Virus record (IMG/VR): IMGVR_UViG_3300028920_000022
Coordinates: 124,001 to 188,000 of that record
Direction: 5' to 3' (one strand)
Length of the DNA: 64,000 nucleotides
Shown: positions 5,220 to 63,663 of the stretch, piece by piece
Numbering within the stretch: position 1 is the first letter of the stretch
How the letters are laid out: every line of letters starts with the position of its first letter
Program-made: the position numbers and the translations under genes
Notes under the pieces: generated by a model
Told to the model about the DNA's origin: nothing
Database searches by the model: none
The model's input: the letters and a program-made list of their open reading frames with translations, nothing else

Positions 5220-5576
5220 ATGAATTCAATGGAAAAAATACTGAAGCTGGCAGAATCTTTTGAGGCTGAGTTAACCAAAACCGCAAAAGGTAAAAAAGAA
5301 AAGAAAGATAAAGACCCCAAAGCAAAGACTAGAAATCGTGGAGACTGTGTATTTCCTGCAGGATCGTCCAAGGTAAAAGATGACAAAGATCATTTTCCTA
5401 TCAATAGCGAAGCTCAGGCACGCAATGCACTAGCTCGTGCCAATCAGTATAGTGCTTCGCCGCCTTGGTATTCTGGATCATTGCAGAGTCTTGTTAGTGC
5501 CGTTTCGCGCGCTGTCCACAAAAAGTACAAGGGCATTGAAGTCAGCAAGAAATCCAAGAAGCCCGGCAAAGGCTAA
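5220..5576 (+). CDS. basic hypothetical protein with KLA..F..KxA leader
   Basis: ILKLAESFEAELTKTA leader; HFPINSEAQARNALARA. Confidence 0.7.
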   Translation: MNSMEKILKLAESFEAELTKTAKGKKEKKDKDPKAKTRNRGDCVFPAGSSKVKDDKDHFPINSEAQARNALARANQYSASPPWYSGSLQSLVSAVSRAVHKKYKGIEVSKKSKKPGKG

Positions 5577-5587
5577 AATAAAAACTG

Positions 5588-5616
5588 TTGACACCCGAAG
5601 GCTTCCATGGTAGCGT
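5588..5616 (+). promoter_or_regulatory. sigma70-like promoter
   Basis: TTGACA-17-TAGCGT, TG extension. Confidence 0.6.
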
Positions 5617-5619
5617 GCG

Positions 5620-5916
5620 GTGGTGTGCTGTCCACTCTGCAAAAGAAAAGATTGCAATTTTAGCGATCATCATCTAGTTCCTCGCTCACGTGGAGGAACA
5701 CGCCAGGACACCGTTCCTATTTGTTTAGATTGCCACAACGGTGTACATGCGTTCTTTACCAACAAAGAATTAGAAAACGAATTCAACTCTGTCGAGGCGT
5801 TACTGGCTGACGAACGTTTTGCCAAACATCTAAGATGGCTGGCAAAACAAAACCCAACAAGACGTCATCGCTCCAAAAGAGTTCGAGACAAAAAGAAAAG
5901 AAACAGAAGTGGGTGA
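5620..5916 (+). CDS. HNH endonuclease-like protein
   Basis: CPLC...HHLVPRSRGG...CLDCHNGVH. Confidence 0.85.
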   Translation: MVCCPLCKRKDCNFSDHHLVPRSRGGTRQDTVPICLDCHNGVHAFFTNKELENEFNSVEALLADERFAKHLRWLAKQNPTRRHRSKRVRDKKKRNRSG

Positions 5917-6215
5917 GCTTTATTGGCGAAGAATTAGAAGAATATTATAATTCCCAGTACGATAAGTATTACAATTTTGACTACGACTTTAACTACGACT
6001 TATATAAAATAAATTTTGCACACAGCTGGCAACTATGTGAAAAAGAATCTAGAGAATCTTATGACCCGGTATTTGTTTGTAAGGTTTGCGGAATTTACGC
6101 TATTGGTAAACCTACAGATCGTTATTCTCCACATGTTTACGCTTATTATACGACGAATTACGACGAGTCGACAATGTCTTGTGCTGAGATTTGTGTAAAG
6201 GATATAATCGAATGA
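5913..6215 (+). CDS. zinc-finger microprotein with C-terminal IKDIIE-type tag
   Basis: HSW..CKVCG..MSCAEICVKDIIE; GTG start inferred from GTGA overlap. Confidence 0.7.
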   Translation: MSFIGEELEEYYNSQYDKYYNFDYDFNYDLYKINFAHSWQLCEKESRESYDPVFVCKVCGIYAIGKPTDRYSPHVYAYYTTNYDESTMSCAEICVKDIIE

Positions 6216-6424
6216 ACGTTTTATACGGTAGTCCACAAAATATGTCACGCATTACTTTAGACGAAATTCCTACAGATCCAATTATCGAACGAATCAAACG
6301 ACTTGCTTTATTGCGCCGAGAAGAACTACAAACTATATTACAATGTGCACCTGACCCTGAAAAATATAATCAAGAGCTATCTGTAATTAATAATATTCTT
6401 TCTGGTATAGAAGGGCTAGATTAG
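6212..6424 (+). CDS. hypothetical protein
   Basis: ATGA-coupled to previous gene. Confidence 0.6.
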   Translation: MNVLYGSPQNMSRITLDEIPTDPIIERIKRLALLRREELQTILQCAPDPEKYNQELSVINNILSGIEGLD

Positions 6425-6443
6425 CTCAGAAAACTCTTGCAAC

Positions 6444-6683
6444 GTGTCACGAAATGATGTAGAAGAGTTGCCGGAAGGTGTTCTTCCCCACGAATTTCCT
6501 AATGAGAATATAATTTCATACGATAATGTCTGTATCTGGTGTGGCGTTTCGAGCGCAACCATGGTGGACAAATTAAATAGAATTCCAGAGTTGCACGGTT
6601 TAACTAGACGCAGACGTGATATTGACATATACTACCCTTGTCTAAACGAAATTGAGAGAACCATCCACGAAATAATCAAGTAG
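6444..6683 (+). CDS. zinc-finger microprotein with C-terminal tag
   Basis: HEF..CIWCG..PCLNEIERTIHEIIK. Confidence 0.65.
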   Translation: MSRNDVEELPEGVLPHEFPNENIISYDNVCIWCGVSSATMVDKLNRIPELHGLTRRRRDIDIYYPCLNEIERTIHEIIK

Positions 6684-6695
6684 AGGAAAAACAAT

Positions 6696-8036: not shown

Positions 8037-8041
8037 GTGCC

Positions 8042-9547: not shown

Positions 9548-9750
9548 ACAAAAAACAACACGAAGTCCTAATAGGGGGACTTTTAGGAGACGCTTCCCTG
9601 GAATTGTCAGGGAAAATGCGTAATCCTCGTGTTCGTATTGAACGTTCTTACAAAGATATCAAATATTTACAGTGGCAGTATAATGTATTTAAAAGCATGT
9701 GCGGATCCGATGTACATGTTTACTGTAGGGCGCTGTCATGCTGTGTGTAA
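9544..9750 (+). pseudogene. truncated LAGLIDADG homing endonuclease remnant
   Basis: LIGGLLGDASL...YLQWQYNVFK, only 68 aa, 3' end overlapped by next gene. Confidence 0.65.
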
Positions 9751-9886: not shown

Positions 9887-10104
9887 AAACAAATAATATG
9901 AAAATAGGAACGCACGAGTTCACGCTTACTGGTTCTAACTATACCAAATGTAATTTATGTGGTATGGTGATTTTAGGTTTAAGTCATGGTTGGGTAATCT
10001 CATGCAGAAATAAGATCAGGGGTGATAGAAAATCTAAACCTATAAGCGGCTTCAAACCAGACTACATCTCCTGTAACGATTTTATAATCAAACAAATAAT
10101 CTAA
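9883..10104 (+). CDS. zinc-finger microprotein with C-terminal tag
   Basis: IGTHEF..CNLCG..PDYISCNDFIIKQII; paralog of previous gene. Confidence 0.7.
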   Translation: MKTNNMKIGTHEFTLTGSNYTKCNLCGMVILGLSHGWVISCRNKIRGDRKSKPISGFKPDYISCNDFIIKQII

Positions 10105-10105
10105 C

Positions 10106-16424: not shown

Positions 16425-16814
16425 ATGGATTATGCTAAAATAGAATTATTAGCTAAGAAATACGCTAAACTAGCGTTGGGTGTAGAAGAACCGACAGCAG
16501 TAGAGCTTCCACATAGGCAGCACCCCCTAGAACGCCCCCCAGAACGTACTATGCTATCCGTTACCCCAGAAGACTCTCAGCGTATACGAGAACAGGAAAT
16601 GCCAGACTTCGAATATATTCCTGGCTATGATAATTTTTCAGACGCAATAGATCACTTAAGAACAGCTACCGGCTACATCGAAGCTATTAAACCAAGTTCT
16701 TATGTAACATATTCGGCACGAGCGCTTATCTCTGATGCCGCACTTCGTATATTAAATGGCATGAAAGAAGTATATAAAGCTACACCTTCAGATAGATTGA
16801 AGGCTAGCCCATAG
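16425..16814 (+). CDS. hypothetical protein with KLA/KxA leader
   Basis: IELLAKKYAKLA leader; GCAT-N7-CAT-N6-ATG upstream. Confidence 0.65.
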   Translation: MDYAKIELLAKKYAKLALGVEEPTAVELPHRQHPLERPPERTMLSVTPEDSQRIREQEMPDFEYIPGYDNFSDAIDHLRTATGYIEAIKPSSYVTYSARALISDAALRILNGMKEVYKATPSDRLKASP

Positions 16815-35928: not shown

Positions 35929-36282
35929 ATGATTATGCGAAAAAAGTTGAACGAATTCAAAAAAATATTCCTTGCTAGGCGTGCTCAATTATTGGAACAA
36001 CTGAATAGAGATACTTTCTTGGACACCGAAGGTGATGATGTTGATTTAATCCAAGGAAAGATATTACATTCAGTAACGGAGAAGCTTTCAGCCAGAGAAC
36101 TTGCGGCTCTTCGTAGAATAGATTTGGCTCTGGAAAAAATCGAGTCAGGGGAATTCGGAACTTGTGAAGAATGTGGTGAGGAAATCCCAGAGAAACGTTT
36201 GATGGCTCATCCGGAAGCTAGCACCTGTATTTCTTGTGCTGAACATCTGGAAAAAATTGAAAAGCAATATGCAAGTGGTTGA
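35929..36282 (+). CDS. DksA/TraR family C4 zinc-finger protein
   Basis: Coiled coil with GDDVD tip; IDLALEKIESGEFGTCEECGEEIPEKRL..PEASTCISC. Confidence 0.9.
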   Translation: MIMRKKLNEFKKIFLARRAQLLEQLNRDTFLDTEGDDVDLIQGKILHSVTEKLSARELAALRRIDLALEKIESGEFGTCEECGEEIPEKRLMAHPEASTCISCAEHLEKIEKQYASG

Positions 36283-36352
36283 TATTACAAAAGAAAATCA
36301 CATTCTTTTAAGTCAAACACAGCATAAATAACCATAGAACAGCAAGGTAACT

Positions 36353-37009
36353 ATGAAAAAAATGAGCTTTGTCCATCCCATGATTTATGAAAAGACACGG
36401 GATGGGGAAATGTTATATGATGTTTATTCGCGCCTAATAAAGGAACGCATAGTTTTTCTAGCAGATGAGGTGGATGTGGAGGTAGCAACAACGGTAGCTG
36501 CTACCTTTTTGTTTCTGGACAGCCAGAGCAAAACGAAACCAATCTCCCTGTATATTAATTCCCCTGGCGGTTCTGTACATGATGGGCTGTTTACCATTTA
36601 CGATGCCATAAATTATATAGAGTGTCCTGTTAAAACTGTGTGCTTAGGTGAGGCTGCTTCCGCGGCTGCAACAATATTGGCTGCCGGTTCACCCGGAATG
36701 AGGTTTGCTACTCCTAATAGTTTAATCATGATTCACCAGTTGCAGATTTCAGATTTGTCTGGTAAAGGAACAGATGTAGCAAAGGAAGCAGAACGGATTA
36801 AAGAATGGAACGAGAGATTGTTTCAAACATTAGCCCGCCATACTGGGCATACTACTGAGGAAATTGCTCAAGTATGTAGAGATGATACGTATTTTAACGC
36901 AAAACAAGCTAAGGAATTCGGTTTGATTGATGAAATTGTTGAACCGAAGAAAAAGATTCCCGATTTAATTACCCAAACCCCAAAAGCAAGACGGAAAAAG
37001 GGTTCGTGA
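36353..37009 (+). CDS. clpP: ATP-dependent Clp protease proteolytic subunit
   Basis: YDVYSRLIKERIVFL, YINSPGGSV, AASAA (catalytic Ser), IMIHQ, RDDTYF..EFGLIDEI. Confidence 0.95.
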   Translation: MKKMSFVHPMIYEKTRDGEMLYDVYSRLIKERIVFLADEVDVEVATTVAATFLFLDSQSKTKPISLYINSPGGSVHDGLFTIYDAINYIECPVKTVCLGEAASAAATILAAGSPGMRFATPNSLIMIHQLQISDLSGKGTDVAKEAERIKEWNERLFQTLARHTGHTTEEIAQVCRDDTYFNAKQAKEFGLIDEIVEPKKKIPDLITQTPKARRKKGS

Positions 37010-37018
37010 TGAGCCTGA

Positions 37019-37459
37019 ATGTATGACGTATTAGTTAGTTTACGATCCAGATTAAAGTTTTATATATCTAGACTTAGATGTGATGCTTGTTATGCACCAT
37101 ATTCTAAACATTGCTCAATATATTTGTGCGAGTCAGGCTCCACATTTGAACAAAATAAGAGCAAATTTTCCATTGATTCTAAACCATCTGGTCAACCAAT
37201 TTCTTTTGGAGCCAGGTTCCCCATTACCTGGAACTCAGCAACAAGTCGACACTTATATACTAACGCTTTGCAAGCAGCCCGGTTAGTTGCAAACCCAGAG
37301 AAGGAAAGAGTAACTAGAAACGTTTTGTCCTTGGAGGTTTGTTGTAGTAGGTGTAATAATTTTAAAGAATTGGAAATAGATTTAGATGATTTTTTGCCAA
37401 AACAATATGGGAAAGCGTCTGTTACTCGGGATTTGAGTTATCCTGATGAAGAAGAATAG
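37019..37459 (+). CDS. Cys-rich hypothetical protein
   Basis: CDAC...CSRC. Confidence 0.6.
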   Translation: MYDVLVSLRSRLKFYISRLRCDACYAPYSKHCSIYLCESGSTFEQNKSKFSIDSKPSGQPISFGARFPITWNSATSRHLYTNALQAARLVANPEKERVTRNVLSLEVCCSRCNNFKELEIDLDDFLPKQYGKASVTRDLSYPDEEE

Positions 37460-37835
37460 GCTACTTCGAGATTTGGATATTCCTAAGAATCGTGTGCGTT
37501 GCGATTTGTGTGGAAAAGAATACTCTAAAGAGATTATTTGTGGGTATTCTATGGGTAACGTTAGGGATTATAGGTTTCGTTATAGCTTCGATTCTACGCA
37601 CCTGCCGTTAATTTACACATGGACCAGCAGACATTGGCTGGTTCGTGATCCCAAATCAGTTAAACATATTTTTAGAAGACGCCGAATGTGTACAGATCTT
37701 ACAACCGTTGATGGGTTCTATCCATACCACAAAATAGCTGTAGAATTAAAGTGTGAGTGTGGTGGTTATAGGACGTATTTTATCAAATTAAAGCACATTT
37801 CTTCATCAACAATACGACGCAGAAGGGCACTCTAA
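37446..37835 (+). CDS. Cys-rich hypothetical protein
   Basis: CDLC...CECG; similar layout to previous gene. Confidence 0.6.
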   Translation: MKKNRLLRDLDIPKNRVRCDLCGKEYSKEIICGYSMGNVRDYRFRYSFDSTHLPLIYTWTSRHWLVRDPKSVKHIFRRRRMCTDLTTVDGFYPYHKIAVELKCECGGYRTYFIKLKHISSSTIRRRRAL

Positions 37836-37846
37836 TATTCTTGCAT
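37833..37846 (+). promoter_or_regulatory. candidate phage-specific promoter TAAT-N7-CAT
   Basis: TAAT-attcttg-CAT, 7 nt before ATG. Confidence 0.55.
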
Positions 37847-37853
37847 ACCAATT

Positions 37854-39341
37854 ATGGAAATTATTGCAAGGAAACGTTCCGAGGATCCAGCCCAGGAAAA
37901 GCTAAGGGAGCGCAAATCCCAATGGAACGCAGAGGTTAAAACCTTAATTGCACAACTTATTGCTTTTAAACGTGGATTAAATGGCAGAGGGGATCCTAGG
38001 GCAGGATTACCCCCGAGTAATATTAAAAACCCCTTTCCTAGTGAAATAGGTCAATACCTGGAAGAGATGGCAACGCGATATCAGAAAGTAATTACTGAAG
38101 CTAAACAAATTATATCTGAACAGTCTGATTATAGTCAAAAACGTCGCAAAGGAAAGAAAGAGATGCCTTTTCCGGTTGCGGCAAGCGTTGAGAATGAAAT
38201 AGAAAAACAGGCGTCTTGGTGGGGAAGTAGAGCCTGGACATGGTTCACTCAGTATCCTATACTGGGTGGAAAAGATGCAGACAGGGATCGGATAGCCTTG
38301 TTACATACTGCTACGGCTTTGATTGATTATATTGATGAAACCGAGGAAGATTTATCTAAAGGCGGTGATGACGCAATACCTTCTGCTGTATATAAATTAT
38401 TAGCAATGCATCGTGTATTTGATATGCGGTTTATTAAGATATTTAACCGCATGATGGTTCGTCATACTCAGGTAGCTGAAGAAAAAGCCCCTACTGAAGC
38501 ACCAGTTTCGCCTGAAGCAGAACCGGAAAGCTATTTTTCTCCACCAGTACCGGATGAACCTAAGGAAGCACTGAGGATATTGGAAGATTTGTTGCTGATT
38601 GATATACATCACGTTAAGAAACTGTTAGATATTGTGAAGCAGTTGAAAAAAGTGTCGCCGGAAGAATACAAGGGTTTGTATCGAGACTATGAATTGATCG
38701 TGAAACTAGGAGGAGAAACTAGAGCACGATTGCGAGTAGCTCAAAGAAGCCCGGATGATACAGAAGAGCTGGCTTCGGCAATGTCTCTTTATAAAGATGT
38801 ATTAATTCGGTACAATAAAGTGTTAAATATATTTAAACGGGCATTGGGAGTTAATGGAAATAGATTCAGAACTTTGTTGGAGCAAGCAGAAGAAACTTAT
38901 AAGAGGGAAATTTCTGCTATGTACGGTCCTGAAATAGAAAAATTAGCCCAGAAATCTCTTAAACGGTGGTGGCGCAGAACTCGGTTGGGTCTTTTCCCGC
39001 GCGAAGAAGACAGAATGAAACGAGATGTTTTGTTGAAGACCCAGGAATTAACTCGTTTATTGAATCATATGCAGGATTTGTTAGAAGAAAAGTATACAAC
39101 AGCTGCCCAAGTGTGGCAACATGTTGCTGATTCGTCCGAATTATTAGCTGAAGTATTTGGGATGATATTAAATCTTTCTGAATACCATAATGCAATGGAA
39201 GCTGATAAGAAATTAAAGAAGACCAAACAACCATCCACAAAAATTGATCGAGATAACCGCATTAAATTAACAAAGTGCCAGAAATATTATAAAGATTTGA
39301 GTAATTTCTTGCAACGAACCATGGGTTCCGCTGAGCAATAA
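37854..39341 (+). CDS. large helical hypothetical protein (candidate virion protein)
   Basis: Repeated EIEKQA / EIEKLA sites; motif upstream. Confidence 0.7.
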   Translation: MEIIARKRSEDPAQEKLRERKSQWNAEVKTLIAQLIAFKRGLNGRGDPRAGLPPSNIKNPFPSEIGQYLEEMATRYQKVITEAKQIISEQSDYSQKRRKGKKEMPFPVAASVENEIEKQASWWGSRAWTWFTQYPILGGKDADRDRIALLHTATALIDYIDETEEDLSKGGDDAIPSAVYKLLAMHRVFDMRFIKIFNRMMVRHTQVAEEKAPTEAPVSPEAEPESYFSPPVPDEPKEALRILEDLLLIDIHHVKKLLDIVKQLKKVSPEEYKGLYRDYELIVKLGGETRARLRVAQRSPDDTEELASAMSLYKDVLIRYNKVLNIFKRALGVNGNRFRTLLEQAEETYKREISAMYGPEIEKLAQKSLKRWWRRTRLGLFPREEDRMKRDVLLKTQELTRLLNHMQDLLEEKYTTAAQVWQHVADSSELLAEVFGMILNLSEYHNAMEADKKLKKTKQPSTKIDRDNRIKLTKCQKYYKDLSNFLQRTMGSAEQ

Positions 39342-39733
39342 TGGACAAAGTAGTTTTTGGAAAACATGAATTACCTACTTTAGTAGCCATTACTGAAGAC
39401 GAACAAGTACAAGGATTAATGTATAAGAGTTGGCCGCCACCCATAATGAGTTTTCCCTTTAAACAATCTAAAGTTCGTAAGTTCTGGATGAGAAACACTA
39501 TTTCTCCGTTAGATATTATATTTTGCCGCGGCAACAAAGTTATTTCTATAATATCTGGAGAACCGTTATCATTAAAACAGGTAGGTCCAGATGAACCCTG
39601 CGATTTAGTTGTTGAATTACCAAAGGGTACAGCTGAGAATATAGGTATTACTGCAGGTAGCATTGTTAAATTGCAGCTATCAACAAACACATTAGCTAAG
39701 AAATATGCAAGTTTTTTGAGCCAAATGAAATAA
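39341..39733 (+). CDS. DUF192 family protein
   Basis: QGLMY, FWMRNTISPLDIIF, VVELPKG..GI..G. Confidence 0.9.
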   Translation: MDKVVFGKHELPTLVAITEDEQVQGLMYKSWPPPIMSFPFKQSKVRKFWMRNTISPLDIIFCRGNKVISIISGEPLSLKQVGPDEPCDLVVELPKGTAENIGITAGSIVKLQLSTNTLAKKYASFLSQMK

Positions 39734-39742
39734 TTATCTTGC

Positions 39743-39771
39743 TTGACAAGTGCCCGAACTTACGATAGATT
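39743..39771 (+). promoter_or_regulatory. sigma70-like promoter, probably leaderless
   Basis: TTGACA-17-TAGATT; ATG 7 nt downstream. Confidence 0.7.
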
Positions 39772-39778
39772 GCTGTAC

Positions 39779-40156
39779 ATGACTACTCTAGCGAAGTGTT
39801 TTGGTGCGCTTGTTGCATCAGGCAACGGGTTTCAGTGCGACAATTTGCGGGTTCTACTCAGACAGAATCTGTTACTTACTGACAGGTTTACTGGGCAATC
39901 TCGTGTATGGTTACATAAGTTTGGTAGGAAACAATTTCCTAATTCACATAGACTTCTTCGTACAGAAATTGCAGAAGAAATAGATATTTTATACGAAGAT
40001 GTACCTACAGTTTTATTACAAAAGCGTATGGATCATGGGGCGGTTTTTACTCACGATCCAGTTTGGCAAAAAGAAATTGAATCTTGGCATTTCTCAGATA
40101 TTTTAGAAGATGCGATGAGAAAAGGAAAATGGAACGGAACAGTTGGATCTTCTTGA
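39779..40156 (+). CDS. hypothetical protein
   Basis: Start reassigned to ATG after promoter. Confidence 0.65.
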   Translation: MTTLAKCFGALVASGNGFQCDNLRVLLRQNLLLTDRFTGQSRVWLHKFGRKQFPNSHRLLRTEIAEEIDILYEDVPTVLLQKRMDHGAVFTHDPVWQKEIESWHFSDILEDAMRKGKWNGTVGSS

Positions 40157-40181
40157 CAAAAAGCTATCGTTCGGTTATTGT
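40153..40181 (+). promoter_or_regulatory. sigma70-like promoter, probably leaderless
   Basis: TTGACA-17-TATTGT; ATG 6 nt downstream. Confidence 0.65.
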
Positions 40182-40187
40182 TGCAGC

Positions 40188-41207
40188 ATGAATGAAGATA
40201 TCAACAAACTGAACGAAGTTCTGGTGGGTTATAAGATCAACGCTAGTTGTGTTGCCGTTAATCGGCACCGCAATTTAGCCATGTATGATATTAAACTTAA
40301 TCCGGGATGTAGGATTCGTAAGCTTGAGCTGTATGCTCGTGAGATTGCGCTGGCACTGAAAAGTAAAAACCCTACTGTAAGGGAAGTTCCTACGGAAGGA
40401 ATTGTTAGATTTACGGTTGCCGAACGTGACCCAGAGGTGTTACCATTTGAATCGCTGGCTGAAGGACCTCGACCTGCTGGTGTTTTGCCTTTGCTTCTAG
40501 GGGAGACCGAAACAGGCGAGAAGCTGTGGATTAAAATGGAAAAAAATCCACATCTACTTGTGGCAGGTGAAACCGGTTCGGGTAAAACTACCGTACTTCA
40601 CACGATTATTGCAAACGTTATTGGTCGTGAGGATGTGTGGCTCTATTTAATTGATCCGAAGAATGGGTTGGAGTTTGGAATCTACGAAAACAAAGCCTAC
40701 AAAATTGCATACGATTACGATGCGGCTTTGGATATGTTGGACGATATTCGTTTTAACATGGATATGCGTGGTAAATTCCTAAATGAAATTGGTAAGCGGA
40801 GTATTGAAGACGATCCTTCGATACTTCCTCCGGTTCTTGTAGTGATTGACGAGATTGCTGCTTTGATGTTGTGGGATTCTGATAAAAAGAACCCACAAAA
40901 AGGAAGTTTTGAAAGAAAACTGGTAGATATTGCCCAGCGATCCCGTTCGTCTGGCATTTACATTGTTTTGGCGACGCAGCGCCCATCTACGGACGTGGTA
41001 ACTGGGCTAATAAAAGCTAATTTTCCTGCTCGGATTGCATGCAGAGTCAGTTCTTCTGTGGATTCTAAGGTCATTTTGGATCAGACTGGAGCCGAAAACC
41101 TTACACCCAGAAGCCATGCTATAATTAGCAGTCCTGAATTATTTGCAACATTTAAAGTTGCTTATACTACAGCAGAAGACAACGTCAAGAGAACTCTATC
41201 TGTATAA
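40188..41207 (+). CDS. FtsK/SpoIIIE-like ATPase (alpha/beta motor only)
   Basis: PHLLVAGETGSGKT, LIDPK, VIDE, LATQRPS, IKANFPARI, DSKVILDQTGAE. Confidence 0.92.
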   Translation: MNEDINKLNEVLVGYKINASCVAVNRHRNLAMYDIKLNPGCRIRKLELYAREIALALKSKNPTVREVPTEGIVRFTVAERDPEVLPFESLAEGPRPAGVLPLLLGETETGEKLWIKMEKNPHLLVAGETGSGKTTVLHTIIANVIGREDVWLYLIDPKNGLEFGIYENKAYKIAYDYDAALDMLDDIRFNMDMRGKFLNEIGKRSIEDDPSILPPVLVVIDEIAALMLWDSDKKNPQKGSFERKLVDIAQRSRSSGIYIVLATQRPSTDVVTGLIKANFPARIACRVSSSVDSKVILDQTGAENLTPRSHAIISSPELFATFKVAYTTAEDNVKRTLSV

Positions 41208-41293
41208 TTAGCAGTTTCGTTGTCGAGAGGGTCACGGTTTTCTAACCCAAGCTTAGGCGAAAATACATTTGAACCTAAGCTCAGGGAGCTTGA

Positions 41294-42811
41294 ATGCAAG
41301 AAACGTCCACGATAGTTGAACAAATAAATGAAATTGCGCAAATTTTACAAGAGGAAGATTTAGATGAGTGGGTAGTACCACAACTGTTAGAGTTTTATTC
41401 TAGTAGAATAAACAGCTTAGCAATAAAAGCCTACGGACCTTCTGCTATTAATAGTGAAGGTCCCTCTCTTGCTCAGCTAGCCTTTAAAGAGCGTGCAAAA
41501 TCTGAGTTGCGTTCTGCTGTTTATACTTTTATTTTCAAATCTGAGCATTGGCGCAATGGTAGAGATATTAATACATATCTTTTAACTTGTTTAAATCGTT
41601 TGGCTGATAGAATTCGGTGGGATACTGATAGTATTAGAAAAACAAACACTCCCGTATGTCCAGCCGCCAAATATCTTCAAAGAAAAGAATTTTTAGTTCA
41701 AGAAGGAAGGTTGTTGCGGTCACAATTTTGTGTGGAAGAGTTGGAAAGAGCTACAGATGAAATAAAAAATCTGCGTAACAAAGAGGAGAAGACAGAACTA
41801 GATCATCAAATGTTATTAAAACTTGAGCTGCGTTCGCGTTTGTTTCGGGCATTTTCTTTACATTCTCGCAAAGGATATCGTTGTCCTGATTGTTTTAGAT
41901 TTATTCCTGAATCATGGAATGGTCCTAATGGTATTTCTTGTCCGTATGATGATTGTATGTTTGGTGGTGACATAAACAGCCTTGAGAGAATGGCACACCC
42001 CGTTGGGCTTACTCAGAGAACTGATCTTAGCCTGCAAACACCAATGTCCGATTCAGAAAGAGACAGCAAACAGATACAGGATACGTTTGTGGCAGAAGTA
42101 ATCGATGCGGATACGCGAATGGAAGTAAATGAAAACTTCAATGAAGAGTTTCGAGTATTAACTGACGTTATTGATGAGCAGGTAAATTCTATTAAACGAA
42201 CAAACTCTGCCGGAACATTGGTACAGAAGCTTCGTATGTACGAAGCATACAAAAATATGTTAAATAAATATCCAGAAGATATGGTGTCGTATTTGGTGCA
42301 CCGCAAGCAGAGTGCAGATTTTCCTATACAGTCTAGGATTTTTCAGGAATATGTTGGTTTAATGCAGGATACGTTGCCTTTTGAAATAAAGCGCGGGGAA
42401 GATACCTATGACGTATTATCTCTAACGGATCCTAATATTTCTTTATTCTTGGGCGTTTCTGAGTTTAATGCTACTGTTCGAAGCGATTTGACTATACCTA
42501 ACTGTACCACAGAAAGCTACATTGGAGGAAGAAAATTTAAAGATTATGGACCATGTTTTATTGGGATGATTATTGATGTTATTGATCGTAATGCTGGAGA
42601 ATCAATCAAGGACAAGATTAAAGAATATAGTTTTGTGCAGATCAAAATGCATGAAACTGTTGTGCCTGGAACACCAGTAAAAGTTACACATTATCGTATC
42701 CCGTCTCATTATGAGATGGGGAATCTCGTGTATCTTCAACGTGTGAGAAAAAAGATAGTAGACAAGGTTTACTATTTGATGCATGGCGAAAAGCGCGTGC
42801 CGGGAAATTAA
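41294..42811 (+). CDS. putative divergent RNA polymerase sigma-like protein with zinc-finger insert
   Basis: AVYTF..WRNGRDINTYLLTCLNRLA resembles sigma regions 2.3-2.4; LSLQTPMSDSERDSKQIQDTF resembles region 3.2; CPDC..CPYDDC. Confidence 0.45.
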   Translation: MQETSTIVEQINEIAQILQEEDLDEWVVPQLLEFYSSRINSLAIKAYGPSAINSEGPSLAQLAFKERAKSELRSAVYTFIFKSEHWRNGRDINTYLLTCLNRLADRIRWDTDSIRKTNTPVCPAAKYLQRKEFLVQEGRLLRSQFCVEELERATDEIKNLRNKEEKTELDHQMLLKLELRSRLFRAFSLHSRKGYRCPDCFRFIPESWNGPNGISCPYDDCMFGGDINSLERMAHPVGLTQRTDLSLQTPMSDSERDSKQIQDTFVAEVIDADTRMEVNENFNEEFRVLTDVIDEQVNSIKRTNSAGTLVQKLRMYEAYKNMLNKYPEDMVSYLVHRKQSADFPIQSRIFQEYVGLMQDTLPFEIKRGEDTYDVLSLTDPNISLFLGVSEFNATVRSDLTIPNCTTESYIGGRKFKDYGPCFIGMIIDVIDRNAGESIKDKIKEYSFVQIKMHETVVPGTPVKVTHYRIPSHYEMGNLVYLQRVRKKIVDKVYYLMHGEKRVPGN

Positions 42812-42921: not shown

Positions 42922-44391
42922 ATGAAAATTAGAAACATACGTTTAGGTTTTGCTACCAACAGTTCTAGTAGCCATAGCATTGTTGTAATTAATGGTGGGG
43001 TTAGCACTTCTAATAGCAATGAACAAGATTTTGGTTGGGATAATTTTACTCTCGGCTCGTATAAATCAAAACTAGAATATCTAGGGCAAATATTAAAAGA
43101 ATCATTTTGTCGTTGGAATTCTTTAGGAAGTAAAGAAGCGGCGCTTCTAGCTAGTAGCTGGTTAGGTATTGATGTAGATCCGAATGGATATATTGATCAT
43201 CAAAGTATGTGGGTGATACCACGTGATTATAAAATTGACTCTTATTGGGGCGCGGGACATATGCCAAGCCGTGAGTTGGTTGAGGCGATGAAATGTGAAT
43301 TACACCGAAAAGATATAGTTATTTTAGGTGGTAATGATAATAGCGACGGACACCCGTTAGCGGATAACGATCTTGCTCCTGCTTTTGCAGGGTTTGATAG
43401 AGATTATTATCGTGGAGAGTGTATAGTAAGGCATGATGAAACGTATGATTATTGGACCATGTTTGATCACACTTCAGGAAATAAAGTAAGATTCAACTTT
43501 ACTGAGAATAGTATTACCAGAGCTGAAGCTCCTGAATTAGTGGATATAAAAATTACTGATAAATGTACCAGGAATTGTAAGTTTTGTTATCAGGATTCTA
43601 AAGTGGATGGTAAACATGCGGACATGTCAGTTATTAGAGAAATTATTAAAACCCTGCATGAAGTGAAGGTATTTGAAGTGGCTCTTGGTGGTGGAGAACC
43701 CACAGAACACCCAGAGTTTATAGCTATATTAAAGAGTTTTAATTCGGTGGGAATTGTTCCTAATTTTTCTACGCGCAATGTAAAATGGGTAAAAGACAAC
43801 ATAGAGGAATTACGTGATGCTGGTGTAGGCGGAATAGGTATTAGTGTTGATAATGTTGAAGATGTAAAACGTGTTCTTTTCCACCTACAGGATGTGAATA
43901 AATTAAATTCACAAGGAGAACATAAACCTTCTATTGTGTTGCATCACGTAGTAGGGGTTGCTCCTGAAAAAGAGTTTGTAGAAATATTAGAATTGGCTCA
44001 AAAGGTTGGATATAGACCATGGGGAGCTAGCGGATGGGCAAATAATCCCTTGCTCCTTTTGGGTTATAAAACTACCGGACGAGGTGGGCAATTTGTTCCG
44101 CATCAGTTTGATGTAATAAAGTTGCTCAAAAATCTTAAGAAAGAACAAGGGTACAACATTGGTGTAGATACGGCGTTTATTGATCAACATAAAGATGAAT
44201 TGTCTAAGCTTACCGATCCGATTTATTGGACAGCAGGCGAAGGTAACTTTTCATTTTATATGGACGCTGTGAACCATAAAATGGGCAACTCTTCATACGA
44301 TCCCTGCCTAATTTCTCTTGCTTTGGGAGATGAATTTAAGGAAATCTATGCGCTAACTCCTGAAGAGAGAATCATTAAAGAGATTGTATGA
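42922..44391 (+). CDS. radical SAM protein with N-terminal TNSSS domain and C-terminal tag
   Basis: IRLGFATNSSSSHS; CTRNCKFCY; ALGGGEP; ends LTPEERIIKEIV. Confidence 0.9.
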   Translation: MKIRNIRLGFATNSSSSHSIVVINGGVSTSNSNEQDFGWDNFTLGSYKSKLEYLGQILKESFCRWNSLGSKEAALLASSWLGIDVDPNGYIDHQSMWVIPRDYKIDSYWGAGHMPSRELVEAMKCELHRKDIVILGGNDNSDGHPLADNDLAPAFAGFDRDYYRGECIVRHDETYDYWTMFDHTSGNKVRFNFTENSITRAEAPELVDIKITDKCTRNCKFCYQDSKVDGKHADMSVIREIIKTLHEVKVFEVALGGGEPTEHPEFIAILKSFNSVGIVPNFSTRNVKWVKDNIEELRDAGVGGIGISVDNVEDVKRVLFHLQDVNKLNSQGEHKPSIVLHHVVGVAPEKEFVEILELAQKVGYRPWGASGWANNPLLLLGYKTTGRGGQFVPHQFDVIKLLKNLKKEQGYNIGVDTAFIDQHKDELSKLTDPIYWTAGEGNFSFYMDAVNHKMGNSSYDPCLISLALGDEFKEIYALTPEERIIKEIV

Positions 44392-48608: not shown

Positions 48609-48914
48609 ATGTCTATAATATACAAACCAGGAAACGTATCACCAGATCGATATGCATATTTGGTTGGCTGTATAGAAACTAACTCTCCATATCGCATGAT
48701 TAGAGTAGATATCTATGGGTCTAATGCTTTGAATTCGACCCACATGAGTTCTGAATGTTATGTGGATATTTTACAAGCCACTGGCAAAACTTACGAAGAA
48801 GCTTGCAATAATTTAATTTCTATTATAACCGCCACCCCAATGTTTCGTTGGATAGTGGATTTGTTACCAGAACGTCTTCAACGCGAAATAACTATTAAGG
48901 ATATAATAACCTAG
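48609..48914 (+). CDS. hypothetical protein with C-terminal tag
   Basis: Ends LQREITIKDIIT. Confidence 0.7.
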   Translation: MSIIYKPGNVSPDRYAYLVGCIETNSPYRMIRVDIYGSNALNSTHMSSECYVDILQATGKTYEEACNNLISIITATPMFRWIVDLLPERLQREITIKDIIT

Positions 48915-49342
48915 TACCCAGATCCTGGTGGCGTCCAGTAGGGGTTTCTAATTTTCTTGGGCTTGGCAGGTCCAGGCTTTTTGTTTTTCCCGCTGCCCCC
49001 ACAGAGCTGGCATATTTTATTTGTATCTTTCCAACCAAGGAATCTGCCCGTTCCTTTACAGGCAAGGCATAATCCTTTTTCTTCCAATTCTTCCTGTAGT
49101 TTTTTAGCTTTAATTCCCCGCTCTTTCATTTCTGCTTTTTCTTCAGGGGTCCATTCAATATCCTCTTCTTCACCAATCGTCCCCTCTCCTTCACAGGTGG
49201 GGCAGACGGTTTCTACAGTGTAGTGTCCCCTGGCATCAGAATATTTGTCCTCAGATTCATAACCTAAACCGCCACAATCTGGACAATCTTCAATTGCAGC
49301 GAGTTTTCGGGCGAAGTATTTTGCAAGCTTGGTTATATGCAT
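48911..49342 (-). CDS. DnaJ-type zinc-finger protein with KLA/KxA leader
   Basis: MHITKLAKYFARKLA; four CxxCxGxG repeats; start reassigned by CAAT-N7-CAT-N6-ATG motif. Confidence 0.75.
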   Translation of the reverse strand: MHITKLAKYFARKLAAIEDCPDCGGLGYESEDKYSDARGHYTVETVCPTCEGEGTIGEEEDIEWTPEEKAEMKERGIKAKKLQEELEEKGLCLACKGTGRFLGWKDTNKICQLCGGSGKNKKPGPAKPKKIRNPYWTPPGSGY

Positions 49343-49348
49343 ACTTGA

Positions 49349-49362
49349 ATGTTGATTTATTG
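49349..49362 (-). promoter_or_regulatory. candidate phage-specific promoter CAAT-N7-CAT
   Basis: Minus strand CAAT-aaatcaa-CAT-tcaagt-ATG; overlaps a divergent TTGACA at 49360. Confidence 0.5.
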
Positions 49363-49397
49363 ACATGGTACGGTTTCTCTGTTAAAAATGAGCCATC

Positions 49398-58051: not shown

Positions 58052-58054
58052 AAA

Positions 58055-59570: not shown

Positions 59571-59626
59571 TTGAGTAATTGCGGCTGTCCTCATCCGCCC
59601 AGTATAACTTAACCGGAGTTACTTTT

Positions 59627-60786: not shown

Positions 60787-60788
60787 GT

Positions 60789-60884
60789 ATGACTGATAAG
60801 AACGCAAATATCGTTATCCTGTTGGGTATTGGTTTTATAGCCGGGTTTATGGCAAGCGAATTGGTTAATTATTTCCTATATTAA
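60789..60884 (+). CDS. 31-aa single-TM peptide (not in ORF track)
   Basis: MTDKNANIVILLGIGFIAGFMASELVNYFLY; SD GGAG. Confidence 0.45.
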   Translation: MTDKNANIVILLGIGFIAGFMASELVNYFLY

Positions 60885-60895
60885 TTATCCCACAT
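60882..60895 (+). promoter_or_regulatory. candidate phage-specific promoter TAAT-N7-CAT
   Basis: TAAT-tatccca-CAT, 6 nt before ATG. Confidence 0.55.
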
Positions 60896-60901
60896 ACAAA
60901 T

Positions 60902-61864
60902 ATGTGGAAAAATTTGCTCAAAGATGCTGATTTATTTGAGAAATTTGCTAAAGCTCAGCCGATCTACATGTATCACGGAACGGCTGAGGATGTTTTGCCG
61001 AGCATTTTGAGCCAGGGACTGATTACTAATCCTAAACAGAGGGCTTGGGCAGAAGATCCTGATGCAAGTTTTTGGATGCCGTCACGCCAATCTTTACATA
61101 GTATATATTTAACCAGCAATTTATTAACGGCATTAGGTTCTGGAGGTCGCCGCCGGAACGAAAAACTAGCTAGAATTCTTCTTATAGTATCAGTACAGCC
61201 GCAATCGTTGGACGCTGATGAGGATTCGTTTATCGGCTTACGGGCAGCAACTCCGACCCACTGGTCGGAGTTTTTGGTTGCGATGGCGTATATTGAGGAA
61301 ATGTCTGGGAAATCAGACGGTACCGTGAACGACGCTGCCATGAAAAAAGATTACGTTGATACTAATCTTGAACGAATAAAGGACAAACTCAAACAGCCAT
61401 TACATCCCGCATTAGCAACGAGACTCAAGGTTCTTTTGGAAAAGTGTTATCTTCCAGCTTTGGCTCGTAAAGCAGCATATGTAGATGCTGGAAGTTGGGA
61501 ACGTGCACAATATCACTTGGAAGTTCAAAATGTAGAACAGCCCAACAAAAACAAAGCAGAACAAGAATTCAAACGTTGTCAGGACCAAGTCACTAGAACA
61601 TTACATATTTTGGCGCGTCCTGATGAGGTTAATGATTTGTTTGACTTTACTGCCAGATCAAATACACCAATTGGATTTTCTGGATCAAACAAGATCGTTG
61701 CTATCTTCAAAGAAGTTCCTAGACCAGATAGCGATTTTAGAAAATGGCTACAGCTTGTCTACCCCGATTCTGTTGATCAGATTCCAGAGGAAGCTCTCAA
61801 TAAACTTATGCAGGACTGGAATCAAACCGTAGGTCCTGGGTTACAAATATTACCGCGTAATTAA
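60902..61864 (+). CDS. ADP-ribosyltransferase-fold protein with KxA leader
   Basis: LLKDADLFEKFAKA leader; MYHGT..LPSILSQGL, IYLTS, DED. Confidence 0.6.
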   Translation: MWKNLLKDADLFEKFAKAQPIYMYHGTAEDVLPSILSQGLITNPKQRAWAEDPDASFWMPSRQSLHSIYLTSNLLTALGSGGRRRNEKLARILLIVSVQPQSLDADEDSFIGLRAATPTHWSEFLVAMAYIEEMSGKSDGTVNDAAMKKDYVDTNLERIKDKLKQPLHPALATRLKVLLEKCYLPALARKAAYVDAGSWERAQYHLEVQNVEQPNKNKAEQEFKRCQDQVTRTLHILARPDEVNDLFDFTARSNTPIGFSGSNKIVAIFKEVPRPDSDFRKWLQLVYPDSVDQIPEEALNKLMQDWNQTVGPGLQILPRN

Positions 61865-62668
61865 TAATTCTTTTTTATTTCTTACAGTATTAATTGTATA
61901 TTTAAGCTCTATTTCTTTTATTGTTGCCCAGCTATATAATTTTCGTATTTCAGGGCAATCATCATAAGATAAAACCCAAGGATGTTTGGTTTGGCGTAAC
62001 GATTTCGCCAAGCGCTCGTGATCTTGTGTGGTGAACCCATGCTGGTACATTTCATTACCTTTAATAAAATAAGGAGGATCTAAATACATAAAAGCTTGAC
62101 AATCATTATTTTTAATTAGCTCTTCAAAGTCCAAACTCCAACACTTGTACCCACGCACGTGTGTGTTTGATAATAGTGGGTAAATGTTATCTATATTTTT
62201 AAACAGCGTTTTAGGGGACCAGCGACAATCTATTTTGTATTGTGACTTTTGGTTTACACCACCTAAGGGTCCACCAGATTTCGTGCCCAAACCAGAATAA
62301 GATATTTGATGTATGGCGAGTTTTTTGAATCCTACATCGGTAATATCGAAAATATTAGGAATAGACGTTAATTCCTTTTTAAATTCCCAAAAATGAGATG
62401 TGTTGGGAACAAATGAACTGATTTTTTCTTTTAAACCTTCTGAGTCTATTAGGATAGCCGTCCAGAGGGCAGCCATTCCCTTATCGATATCATTTATCCA
62501 CAGTTTTTTGATGTTAATATTTGATAATAGTTTAAAACCAATCGAGCCCCCTCCAAAGAAAGGTTCTCTATATTCTGCGTTGGTATTTTTTTCAAATATA
62601 GAGGTGAGTGCTGCGAGTATTGGTTTACTAATTTTGGCTTTTCCGCCTGGATATCGCAATAACATCAT
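61850..62668 (-). CDS. Dam-like (D12 class) DNA adenine methyltransferase
   Basis: LRYPGGK, EPFFGGGS, INDID, YLDPPY, LSYDD, ELLI. Confidence 0.93.
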   Translation of the reverse strand: MMLLRYPGGKAKISKPILAALTSIFEKNTNAEYREPFFGGGSIGFKLLSNINIKKLWINDIDKGMAALWTAILIDSEGLKEKISSFVPNTSHFWEFKKELTSIPNIFDITDVGFKKLAIHQISYSGLGTKSGGPLGGVNQKSQYKIDCRWSPKTLFKNIDNIYPLLSNTHVRGYKCWSLDFEELIKNNDCQAFMYLDPPYFIKGNEMYQHGFTTQDHERLAKSLRQTKHPWVLSYDDCPEIRKLYSWATIKEIELKYTINTVRNKKELLITR

Positions 62669-62714
62669 CGGGATGTATGGGAAAAACCAGCAGTCTCGAC
62701 GCTATTCAGGCTGG

Positions 62715-62728
62715 TAATAGAGAAACAT
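62715..62728 (+). promoter_or_regulatory. candidate phage-specific promoter TAAT-N7-CAT
   Basis: TAAT-agagaaa-CAT, 6 nt before ATG. Confidence 0.55.
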
Positions 62729-62734
62729 AAGAGT

Positions 62735-63319
62735 ATGGTCAAGTTTAAAGTATCCGAATCGGCAAATTGTCAGGTGTGTAGCGAGGAATTCCATGATTTC
62801 CAGCTAAAAACCACCAAAGTAGGTTCTAAAGTACTGGACATTTGTCCAGGATGTCTTGAATCCTTTTCTAATTATGTAGATGCGGCTAAAATTTTAAACA
62901 AGATTGCTCAACCAGCAGATGTTCAACTGGAGTCTCCTAATGTGGTTGTAGAGCCTATGCAACCGGTCATTCAGCGTGCTACAGAAGTTTTGAAGAGAAT
63001 GGATCCTAATTATTTTATTGGTGTTAGGAAAATCAAGGCGGGCGTTTCTCCTTATTTTGGGCATGTAGAATCTGGTCCAGACAAAGACCCAGCTGTTATT
63101 AATATTAATCTAGGTATGGTTTCCCAGAAGGCACGAGAATATAATGCTAATCCCGTTATAGCTTCTGCTATTGTTATTGCTCACGAAAAGGGACATGTGG
63201 GTAGTTATGAACAGCAACAGGGGTTTGTAGGTGGAGAATCTCCTGCCGAACAAGAAGAGCAAAGAGTGGCTGCTTGGATTGAAAAGAACAAAGATCGTTT
63301 GCAAGATTTGATGCAATAA
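62735..63319 (+). CDS. zinc-ribbon + HExxH zincin-like protein
   Basis: CQVC..CPGC; ILNKIA site; AHEKGH..GGESPAE. Confidence 0.65.
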   Translation: MVKFKVSESANCQVCSEEFHDFQLKTTKVGSKVLDICPGCLESFSNYVDAAKILNKIAQPADVQLESPNVVVEPMQPVIQRATEVLKRMDPNYFIGVRKIKAGVSPYFGHVESGPDKDPAVININLGMVSQKAREYNANPVIASAIVIAHEKGHVGSYEQQQGFVGGESPAEQEEQRVAAWIEKNKDRLQDLMQ

Positions 63320-63333
63320 TCGATAGGTAATTT

Positions 63334-63663
63334 ATGGATATTATAAAACTAGCAAAACATTTTGAAAATAAAATTTCTAAAACATCTGGAGCTTTCGGTT
63401 CCGGAATAGACCGCTCCGATATTGAAAATATTCAAAATTCTCTTAATCAAGCAATAGATTCTATAGACCAAGGCGAGAGAGTTGCTAAACATCTTCAACA
63501 AAACGCAAAAGAGCCTATGAGAAGATTATTATCCAAAATTGAAGCTCGTTTTAGAGCCGCTAAAAAGGATTTATCTGAAAGCCAGTGGAGTACGTATAAT
63601 GAAAGTTATGATTCTGTTGGTGTTATGATAAAACAATTGATGAAGTCTATGGGAAATTGGTAA
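63334..63663 (+). CDS. hypothetical protein with KLA..F..KxS leader
   Basis: MDIIKLAKHFENKISKTS. Confidence 0.65.
   Translation: MDIIKLAKHFENKISKTSGAFGSGIDRSDIENIQNSLNQAIDSIDQGERVAKHLQQNAKEPMRRLLSKIEARFRAAKKDLSESQWSTYNESYDSVGVMIKQLMKSMGNW

What the first reader, a model, noticed from the sequence alone, without database searches (positions are those of the whole stretch)
5220..63663. Shared N-terminal KLA..[FY]..KxA leader: candidate virion-targeting, protease-cleaved propeptide
Seen: EKILKLAESFEAELTKTA (5220), KIELLAKKYAKLA (16425), HITKLAKYFARKLA (49342 minus), NLLKDADLFEKFAKA (60902), DIIKLAKHFENKISKTS (63334). Related [IL]xKxA sites: EIKKEA (Dps-like), ILNKIA (62735), EIEKQA/EIEKLA (37854); a C-terminal TLAKKYA occurs in DUF192. 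The downstream domains are unrelated and the genes share the AAT-N7-CAT motif. Established: T4 internal proteins use a short N-terminal capsid-targeting sequence removed by the prohead protease, and phiKZ head proteins are processed at short motifs. Inference: a second address code loading cargo (ART-fold, Dps-like, zinc-finger, zincin) into the head. It is mutually exclusive with the C-terminal tag in this window.
Basis: partly seen in the sequence, partly recalled or inferred. Interest (0 to 1): 0.75.

Follow-up and report, generated by a model that had tools for sequence, protein, structure and literature searches.

The report
Shared N-terminal helix tags phage proteins
In an uncultivated 459-kb phage and its relatives, otherwise unrelated proteins begin with the same short helix. 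In related phages that helix joins the head-scaffold-like protein to one of these proteins, so it is probably a signal for loading cargo into the capsid, though neither loading nor cleavage has been shown.

Summary
The window is bases 124001-188000 of a 458,729-bp virus record.

A consensus h-x-x-L-A-x-x-[FY]-[ED]-K-x-A is real. A profile built only from proteins of other phages ranks w5220, w63334, w60902 and w16425 among the top 7 of 727 ORFs. Across 3,200 unrelated ORFs of related phages, 13 of 20 hits start within 12 residues of the N-terminus (1.1 expected, p 3e-12). w49366 is doubtful. The extra [IL]xKxA sites are noise.

The leader is conserved in orthologues of two unrelated families: a DUF6582-like core and a Tpt1/ART-like enzyme.

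The main evidence comes from relatives. There the DUF6582 core is the C-terminal end of an acidic scaffold-like protein. That protein is encoded just after a putative head-maturation protease, between portal and capsid genes. The fusion is in frame in some phages and needs a -1 frameshift at canonical slippery heptamers in others. The w5220 leader aligns with the junction helix.

This Gag-Pol-like arrangement favours procapsid targeting (about 0.45). Cleavage at KxA is unsupported, because KxA is part of the helix. No proteomic or binding evidence exists.

The parts
5220..5576 (+). w5220, 118 aa: N-terminal helix, Lys-rich linker, DUF6582-like core. This is the archetype leader protein.
   Evidence: AF2 model: helix 3-24, low-confidence linker 25-42, compact core 43-113.
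5232..5285 (+). Leader helix EKILKLAESFEAELTKTA
   Evidence: rank 1. It aligns to the junction helix of the scaffold-like/core fusion proteins.
5201..5213 (+). Upstream motif AATATTTTTCCAT, 19 nt before the ATG
63334..63663 (+). w63334, 109-aa ORFan with leader
   Evidence: Only a self hit in 5.8e9 proteins.
63337..63387 (+). Leader helix DIIKLAKHFENKISKTS
   Evidence: Rank 3-4 of 727 with the external profiles.
60902..61864 (+). w60902, 320 aa, Tpt1/ART-like (YHGT...QGL) with leader
   Evidence: There are 15 homologues, most with the same N-terminal helix.
60908..60955 (+). Leader helix KNLLKDADLFEKFAKA, a diverged form of the family's ..LA.LFEK.AKA
   Evidence: rank 5.
60883..60895 (+). Upstream motif AATTATCCCACAT, 19 nt before the ATG
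16425..16814 (+). w16425, 129 aa, no detectable relatives; moderate leader match
   Evidence: The same syntenic slot in G003 holds a 117-aa ORF with a strong leader but no other similarity.
16434..16475 (+). Leader-like helix AKIELLAKKYAKLA
   Evidence: 2.7 to 6.8 bits. Rank 7 of 727 with the two-family external profile, but rank 49 in the leave-one-out test.
48911..49366 (-). w49366, 151 aa, DnaJ-type CXXCXGXG zinc finger; doubtful member
   Evidence: Pfam PF00684 E 2.4e-9. No relatives found.
49298..49342 (-). Leader-like helix MHITKLAKYFARKLA. It resembles w63334 but fails the external profile.
   Evidence: Pair score 35 with w63334. Rank 200 of 727.

Best explanation
The N-terminal helix of about 16-20 residues (h-x-x-L-A-x-x-[FY]-[ED]-K-x-A) is a modular address that brings accessory proteins into the assembling procapsid. 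It descends from, or mimics, the helix at the C-terminal end of the phage's scaffold-like head protein.

Shown:
- The helix is a conserved, position-restricted N-terminal module on unrelated proteins across this huge-phage lineage.
- In relatives, the w5220-type core is made as a C-terminal extension of the scaffold-like protein, in frame or by a -1 frameshift.
- The w5220 leader aligns with the junction helix of those fusions.

Inferred:
- After gene fission, the retained helix lets the free protein co-assemble with the scaffold or the capsid interior. Other cargo (Tpt1/ART-like enzymes, small ORFans) uses the same helix.
- Cargo is later ejected with the DNA, as with T4 Alt and the internal proteins.

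Removal of the helix by the head protease is possible but has no evidence.
For: 1. Lineage-wide N-terminal restriction on unrelated ORFs. 13 of 20 hits fall in the first 12 residues against 1.1 expected (p 3e-12), and the reversed control is flat.

2. The leader is conserved in orthologues of two unrelated families. About 55 of 150 DUF6582-family representatives start M-x3-4 and then the helix. Most of the 15 Tpt1/ART-like homologues do the same.

3. Synonymous codons differ between leaders, so selection acts on the peptide.

4. The head module of this genome, in gene order, is:
- TerL at 229839
- portal at 231672
- a 1135-aa protein with a protease-like N-terminal part (phrog_18299, E 1.6e-12)
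- an acidic scaffold-like protein at 243292
- the major capsid protein at 252721 (phrog_2522, E 1e-78)

5. In 12 related loci plus G003, the DUF6582 core is the C-terminal end of the scaffold-like protein. It is in frame in L101, L120/121, L124/165, L140 and L154. It needs a -1 shift at C_CCA_AAA in G003 and at T_TTT_TTA in L125 and L134/135. Those slip sites lie 1-2 codons before the stop, and the core ORF has no start codon of its own.

6. In all 14 loci where the core stands alone, next to the ATPase/HNH pair as in this window, it carries the leader.

7. BLAST aligns w5220 residues 1-108 to L120 residues 302-404 (E 3e-25). In L125 and L134 the zero-frame scaffold-like product ends with ..SLQKLAEEL.FLA.

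8. G000, G001 and G003 each hold exactly one core copy, either fused or free.

9. The cargo types match precedent. T4 packages the ADP-ribosyltransferase Alt and small diverse internal proteins through a conserved N-terminal CTS (PMC3012670, PMC5694885). P1 DarB has an N-terminal 30-residue packaging signal (PMC9024508).

10. Leader genes share an upstream motif with two genes of the structural region: 3 of 7 leader genes against 9 of 727 genes overall.
Against: - There is no virion proteomics or any expression data.
- The leader genes in the window lie among replication and host-like genes, 40 kb or more from the head module.
- The scaffold-like protein of this genome does not itself end in the helix. 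The receptor is unknown.
- The identity of the 'scaffold' rests on gene order and composition only. No family hit was found.
- The protease call rests on PHROG hits only. Pfam S77 and S78 gave no hit, and the AF2 model of the domain was unusable at pLDDT 42.
- The helix is also present when the core is fused, so it could be a structural part of the module rather than an address.
- In the ART-like family the helix abuts the catalytic domain.
- The complex prediction (capsid protein, 233-aa neighbour, w63334) gave no answer.
- Only about 1-9 ORFs per genome carry the helix.
Confidence: 0.45

Rival explanations
1. The helix is an ordinary structural or oligomerisation element, such as a capping helix or coiled-coil. 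It belongs to the DUF6582 module and to the ART-like fold, and it has no addressing role. Its recurrence reflects common descent of small helical N-domains or convergence.
For: - The helix is kept in the fusion proteins, where no address would be needed.
- Many family members with internal cores still have some amphipathic helix before the Lys-rich linker.
- In the ART-like family the helix lies 3-5 residues from YHGT.
- The AF2 model gives the helix pLDDT of about 80.
Against: - The same specific consensus (LA..[FY][ED]K.A) sits at residue 2-7 of unrelated ORFans.
- Fold matches of the w5220 model cover only residues 43-117 and never the helix.
- The linker between helix and core is predicted to be disordered.
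Confidence: 0.25
2. The helix docks its bearers to some hub other than the capsid. One candidate is an adaptor or unfoldase feeding the phage ClpP (an N-terminal degron for timed turnover). Others are a chaperone or a regulator.
For: - A full-length ClpP (PF00574, 204 bits) is encoded in the window at 36353-37009 and is conserved in G001 and G003.
- AAA+ ATPases are nearby.
- N-terminal ClpX/ClpA recognition signals are known (general knowledge).
Against: - In the fusions the helix is internal, where an N-degron cannot work.
- The linkage to the head-module scaffold-like gene is unexplained by this idea.
- ClpP sits next to a DksA-like gene in a cellular-type context.
- No ClpX-like partner was identified.
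Confidence: 0.1
3. The match is chance: generic amphipathic N-terminal helices picked out by eye.
For: - Pairwise N-terminal scores within G000 are no better than internal controls.
- w49366 fails the external profile.
Against: - External-profile ranks and the lineage-wide positional test, p 1e-8 to 3e-12, with reversed controls.
- The helix is conserved in orthologues.
Confidence: 0.05

Closest known systems
T4 capsid targeting sequence (CTS) of IPI-III and Alt
   Same: A short conserved N-terminal peptide sits on otherwise unrelated, fast-evolving small proteins and on an ADP-ribosyltransferase. It targets them to the scaffold core of the prohead (PMC3012670, PMC5694885).
   Different: There is no sequence similarity. 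No consistent L/I-x-E site follows the helix. No T4 gp21-type protease was detected (control silent). The capsid protein here is a 339-aa HK97-type protein without a propeptide. Packaging and cleavage are untested here.
P1 DarB N-terminal packaging signal
   Same: The N-terminal 30 residues or fewer are sufficient to load a heterologous protein into the head (PMC9024508).
   Different: It is a single protein's signal, not a motif shared by many proteins. No homology.
SPN3US/phiKZ ejection-protein propeptides
   Same: These are giant phages with paralogues sharing identical N-terminal residues, proposed to be CTS-like (PMC5694885).
   Different: Those propeptides are mostly over 100 residues and are cut at AXE/SXE by a gp21-like protease. 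No such motif pattern is seen here.
Retroviral/Ty Gag-Pol and totivirus Gag-Pol -1 frameshifting
   Same: An X_XXY_YYZ slip site just before the stop of the assembly protein appends a cargo domain at low stoichiometry, so that it is co-assembled into the capsid (general knowledge; slip sites).
   Different: The setting here is a tailed-phage head module. The cargo is a small basic domain of unknown function. Frameshifting is inferred from sequence only, and it occurs in relatives, not in this genome.
Scaffolding-protein C-terminal coat-binding helix (P22 gp8 type) and encapsulin cargo-loading peptides
   Same: A short terminal helix or peptide binds the inside of an HK97-fold shell (general knowledge).
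   Different: Those signals are C-terminal and have different sequences. Binding of this helix to the capsid protein is not shown (one search gave no answer).

Membership tests
T4-type capsid targeting sequence | Conserved N-terminal peptide of 10-20 aa on otherwise unrelated proteins | tested here: met
T4-type capsid targeting sequence | Ends in a prohead-protease site (L/I-x-E) at a consistent position | tested here: not met
   Leaders read. Acidic residues are scattered and no common P3-P1 pattern exists. The KxA triplet is part of the helix consensus.
T4-type capsid targeting sequence | gp21-type (Peptidase_S77) prohead protease in the genome | tested here: inconclusive
   No PF03420 hit, but the control genomes did not ring either. 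A different protease-like domain was found by PHROG.
T4-type capsid targeting sequence | Bearers are present in proheads or virions and are ejected | not testable with these tools
   Uncultivated phage; no proteome available.
Gag-Pol-like frameshift fusion of cargo to an assembly protein (in relatives) | Canonical X_XXY_YYZ heptamer just upstream of the zero-frame stop. The -1 ORF has no start codon and is homologous to in-frame fusions elsewhere. | tested here: met
   G003 has C_CCA_AAA. L125 and L134/135 have T_TTT_TTA. In-frame fusions occur in L101, L120, L124, L140 and L154. Frameshifting itself has not been measured.
Pfam DUF6582 (PF20223), for w5220 | Score above the curated cut-off of 27.3 bits | tested here: not met
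   15.7 bits, E 0.02. The family is therefore called DUF6582-like. Its own family is large, with 499 representatives.
HK97-type head module (portal, protease, scaffold, capsid protein) | HK97-fold capsid protein; a protease gene followed by a scaffold gene upstream of it | tested here: inconclusive
   The capsid protein is firm (phrog_2522, E 1e-78; atlas Phage_capsid_4). The protease has PHROG hits only, Pfam S78 is negative and the model is unusable. The scaffold is inferred from position and composition.
Tpt1/KptA-ART superfamily, for w60902 | Significant match to the catalytic domain | tested here: inconclusive
   PARP E 0.017. Tpt1 chains in the PDB give E 0.6-0.8 over the YHGT region.
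Encapsulin cargo-loading peptide | Terminal peptide with the G-S-L-type consensus, and cargo genes next to the shell gene | tested here: not met
   The motif differs, and the leader genes are dispersed.

The most novel reading that the evidence does not exclude
A lineage of uncultivated 200-470-kb phages loads a changeable set of enzymes and small proteins into the capsid by giving them a copy of the scaffold protein's terminal helix. The same cargo can be attached in three ways: in-frame fusion to the scaffold, a programmed -1 frameshift as in Gag-Pol, or the free helix tag. This would be a portable, sequence-defined capsid address for huge phages.
Probability: 0.35. Interest if true: 0.8.

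Novelty: new variant of a known kind. Interest (0 to 1): 0.65.

Why it matters
If the helix is a capsid address, it gives a sequence rule for predicting which proteins of uncultivated huge phages are injected into the host. These include ADP-ribosyltransferase-like enzymes and other likely host-takeover or anti-defence proteins. It would also supply a short tag for loading foreign proteins into large capsids. The three alternative attachments of the same cargo (fusion, frameshift, free tag) would show how internal-protein systems like T4's can arise from scaffold genes.

Tried and rejected
- DNA-level explanation (shared 5' nucleotide cassette): rejected, because synonymous codons differ between leaders.
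- The '[IL]xKxA' sites as related sites: rejected as noise.
- A C-terminal LLxKYA-type tag in this genome: no enrichment, 5 found against 4.9 expected.
- Megablast of the window against GenBank phages: no match.
- Homologue searches for w63334 and g269825 found only themselves. Searches for w49366 and w16425 in IMG/VR found nothing.
- PHROG and Pfam scans of ten leader-bearing ORFs from other phages were uninformative.
- Fold search of the w5220 model against PDB and AFDB found only uncharacterised small proteins, matching the core alone.
- The profile against PDB sequences found nothing.
- Complex prediction of capsid protein, 233-aa neighbour and w63334: no answer, so it is not evidence either way.
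- The AF2 model of the protease-like domain had pLDDT 42 and was not used.
- Pfam on that domain found nothing.
- Literature string searches for leader peptides and for DUF6582 returned nothing relevant.
- ClpP as the head protease: judged unlikely from its cellular-type score and its DksA-like neighbour, but not excluded.


Full report
WHAT THE WINDOW IS. The window is bases 124001-188000 of a single 458,729-bp virus record rated complete. It has no near relative among GenBank phages. I called 727 ORFs by a crude longest-ORF rule.

The window itself is not a structural region. It encodes:
- an FtsK-like ATPase, a radical-SAM enzyme, a nucleotidyltransferase and a phosphatase
- a type IA topoisomerase, an AAA ATPase, a DksA-like zinc finger and a full-length ClpP
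- a Thg1-like enzyme and a Dam methylase

The head module lies downstream in the genome:
- large terminase at 229839
- portal at 231672
- a 1135-aa protein at 239873 whose N-terminal part matches PHROG 'head maturation protease' (E 1.6e-12)
- an acidic low-complexity protein at 243292
- the 339-aa HK97-type major capsid protein at 252721 (phrog_2522, E 1e-78)

THE OBSERVATION. All five peptides are present at the N-termini of ATG-started ORFs at the coordinates given. Two more of the same kind lie outside the window, at genome 268971 and 269825. They form an insertion between genes that are adjacent in two related genomes.

Within this genome alone the case is only moderate:
- The regex K[LI]A..[FY] is about three-fold enriched in the first 30 residues.
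- A leave-one-out profile recovers four or five members but not w16425 or w60902.
- In an unbiased all-against-all comparison of N-termini, the leader pairs score no better than pairs of internal segments.

NON-CIRCULAR TESTS. A phmmer search of w5220 against 1.84 billion representatives found 499 relatives. About 55 of the best 150 begin, at residue 5 or so, with the same helix. It is followed by a Lys-rich linker, a nearly invariant LDPKAKVRNRG stretch and the DHFPIN...ARNALAR core.

The 15 relatives of w60902, a Tpt1/ART-like protein, mostly begin with ..LA.LFEK.AKA directly before the YHGT motif. w60902 therefore carries a diverged copy of a conserved leader.

A profile built only from these foreign sequences ranks the G000 ORFs as follows, out of 727:
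- w5220 #1, w63334 #3, g269825 #4, w60902 #5, w16425 #7
- Most of the remaining top nine are also N-terminal, some after correcting an over-extended start.
- w49366 ranks #200 and g268971 #68. w49366 is doubtful, although it resembles w63334.

I then scanned about 3,200 dereplicated ORFs from two related genomes that I pieced together from fetched stretches (G001, 434,688 bp; G003, 321,461 bp), this genome, and 79 loci of other huge phages. Both source families were excluded. Of 20 hits at 5 bits or more, 13 start within the first 12 residues, against 1.1 expected (p 3e-12). Reversed sequences give 7 hits, one of them N-terminal.

The consensus is h-x-x-L-A-x-x-[FY]-[ED]-K-x-A. Synonymous codons differ freely between leaders, so the constraint is on the peptide and not the DNA.

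The bearers are mostly ORFans. w63334 and g269825 have no relative among 5.8 billion clusters. Ten bearers from other phages have no family. The slot of w16425 holds, in G003, a different small protein with a strong leader.

WHERE THE HELIX COMES FROM. In 78 related loci the DUF6582-like core occurs in two recurrent settings.

In 14 loci it stands alone beside homologues of the ATPase (w6696) and HNH-like (w8042) genes, as in this window. In every one of these it has the leader.

In 12 loci and in G003 it lies in the head module, directly after the protease-like gene. There it forms the C-terminal end of a 244-443-aa protein with these features:
- a conserved N-terminus (..DIA..MN.I....Y..IF)
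- a conserved ..ISE.LD.AGL.. helix
- long poly-Lys/Glu and poly-acidic tracts

This composition and position are those expected of a scaffolding protein. I call it scaffold-like. No family model names it.

The fusion is in frame in L101, L120/121, L124/165, L140 and L154. In the other cases the core ORF has no start codon and lies in the -1 frame:
- In G003 the frames overlap at C_CCA_AAA, one codon before the stop.
- In L125 and L134/135 the heptamer is T_TTT_TTA, two codons before the stop.
- The shifted reading continues exactly into the linker and core.

In L125 and L134 the unshifted product ends with ..SLQKLAEEL.FLA, which is the leader-type helix. BLAST aligns w5220 residues 1-108, leader included, to residues 302-404 of the L120 fusion (51% identity, E 3e-25).

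The scaffold-like protein of this genome (243292-244263) is the top hit of both N-terminal profiles (E 0.003 and 0.03) and lacks the core. G000, G001 and G003 each contain exactly one core copy, free or attached.

w5220 is therefore best read as the product of a gene fission that kept the junction helix.

HOW IT MOST LIKELY WORKS. Attaching a minor protein to the assembly protein, particularly by a low-efficiency -1 frameshift just before its stop, is the Gag-Pol way of putting cargo inside a capsid. By that logic the DUF6582-like core is procapsid cargo in the relatives. That step is an inference from architecture.

Where the core is free, the only thing it retains from the scaffold-like protein is the helix. 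The same helix heads unrelated accessory proteins. The best reading is that the helix is sufficient for co-assembly with the scaffold or the capsid interior. That is also an inference.

The kinds of bearer fit the T4 precedent, in which only the CTS is conserved among diverse packaged proteins, including the ADP-ribosyltransferase Alt (PMC3012670, PMC5694885). The bearers here are:
- a small, very basic protein
- two Tpt1/ART-like enzymes, plus one in L102
- rapidly changing ORFans

P1 DarB shows that an N-terminal signal of 30 residues or fewer can be enough (PMC9024508).

The AF2 model of w5220 shows a helix at 3-24, a low-confidence but highly conserved linker at 25-42 and a compact core at 43-113. 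Fold matches cover the core only. A conserved disordered linker is a candidate processing or binding site. I have no evidence for which.

WHAT IS NOT SUPPORTED.
- Cleavage after KxA. KxA is the end of the helix consensus, no common protease motif follows, and in the ART-like family the helix abuts the catalytic domain.
- Late expression is unknown.
- The protease assignment rests on PHROG matches alone. Pfam S77 and S78 were negative, Pfam on the domain found nothing, and the structural model was unusable.
- The complex prediction gave no answer and counts neither way.
- The Dps-like protein (weak ferritin match), the HExxH protein w62735 and w37854 do not carry the leader. They share only the upstream DNA motif.

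RIVALS.
- Structural or oligomerisation helix with no address function (0.25). The helix persists in the fusions and lies close to the ART domain.
- Docking to another hub, such as a ClpP-linked adaptor (0.10). A conserved phage ClpP is in the window, but an N-degron cannot explain the internal position in fusions or the link to the head module.
- Chance (0.05). This remains realistic only for w49366.

COMPARISON AND NOVELTY. Functionally this resembles the T4 CTS and the P1 DarB signal. It is not a member of the T4 system by sequence, protease type or cleavage motif. I did not find a scaffold-to-cargo frameshift described in a limited literature search. I class the finding as a new variant of a known kind. 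Everything concerning packaging remains to be tested experimentally.

Noticed in passing
G003 (L083) about 3144-3165, which is G003:203144-203165; L125 about 9975-9992; L134 about 9972-9989: Apparent programmed -1 frameshift sites (C_CCA_AAA in G003, T_TTT_TTA in L125 and L134). They lie 1-2 codons before the stop of the scaffold-like head gene and would append the DUF6582-like core. Other relatives have the same two parts fused in frame.
   Followed up: partly
window 5201-5213, 37834-37846, 60883-60895, 62716-62728; genome 246298, 268624, 269825, 443540, 449396: The motif AATA-N5-GCAT ends about 7 nt before the ATG of nine genes, against roughly 3 expected. Most of these genes lack a Shine-Dalgarno sequence. 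Similar TTATTGGCATA and TTATTAGTATA boxes lie upstream of leader-type DUF6582 genes in other phages. This could be a promoter with a very short leader, or a translational operator.
   Followed up: partly
window 42922-44391 (+); genome 102407, 425150, 425658, 426023, 426544: A much stronger shared N-terminus, MKIR.GF.(S/T)NSSSS.., heads five small paralogues and the radical-SAM protein of the window. The window ORF's true start is probably the ATG at 42922. This is by far the top cluster in the unbiased comparison of N-termini. Its function is unknown.
   Followed up: no
L002 1983-3920 and 5278-7511, 11902: A 34-kb contig of a more distant phage carries two other N-terminal leader families on runs of adjacent, dissimilar genes: MKKLLTEWRKFLKE (5 genes) and MKI[ST]KS.L...IKEEL (6 genes). 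The second set includes its DUF6582-like homologue. Both leaders contain [LI]-K-E, which resembles the T4 protease site. Lineage-specific leaders may be common.
   Followed up: no
window 35929-42811: A block conserved in G001 and G003: DksA-like zinc finger, full-length ClpP (204 bits), two small ORFs, a 495-aa helical protein, DUF192, an FtsK-like ATPase and a 505-aa protein.
   Followed up: partly
genome 268971-270820 (outside the window): Two leader-bearing genes on opposite strands, an ART-like paralogue of w60902 and a 331-aa ORFan. They form an insertion between structural-region genes that are adjacent in G001 and G003.
   Followed up: partly
DUF6582-family relatives (P0009, P0010, P0018, P0098 and others): Many long relatives add C-terminal peptidoglycan-binding-like repeats (DG.LGP.T). 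They also carry a recurrent [LI][LI].K[YF][AGS]Q motif after KKKSS linkers and at their extreme C-termini. It is not enriched at C-termini in this genome.
   Followed up: partly
genome 252721-253740 and G001/G003 orthologues: The N-terminal arm of the capsid protein has a conserved helix, ..D A . . . . . K [FY] A . . . E E. This is a possible partner surface for scaffold-type helices. It was not tested.
   Followed up: no
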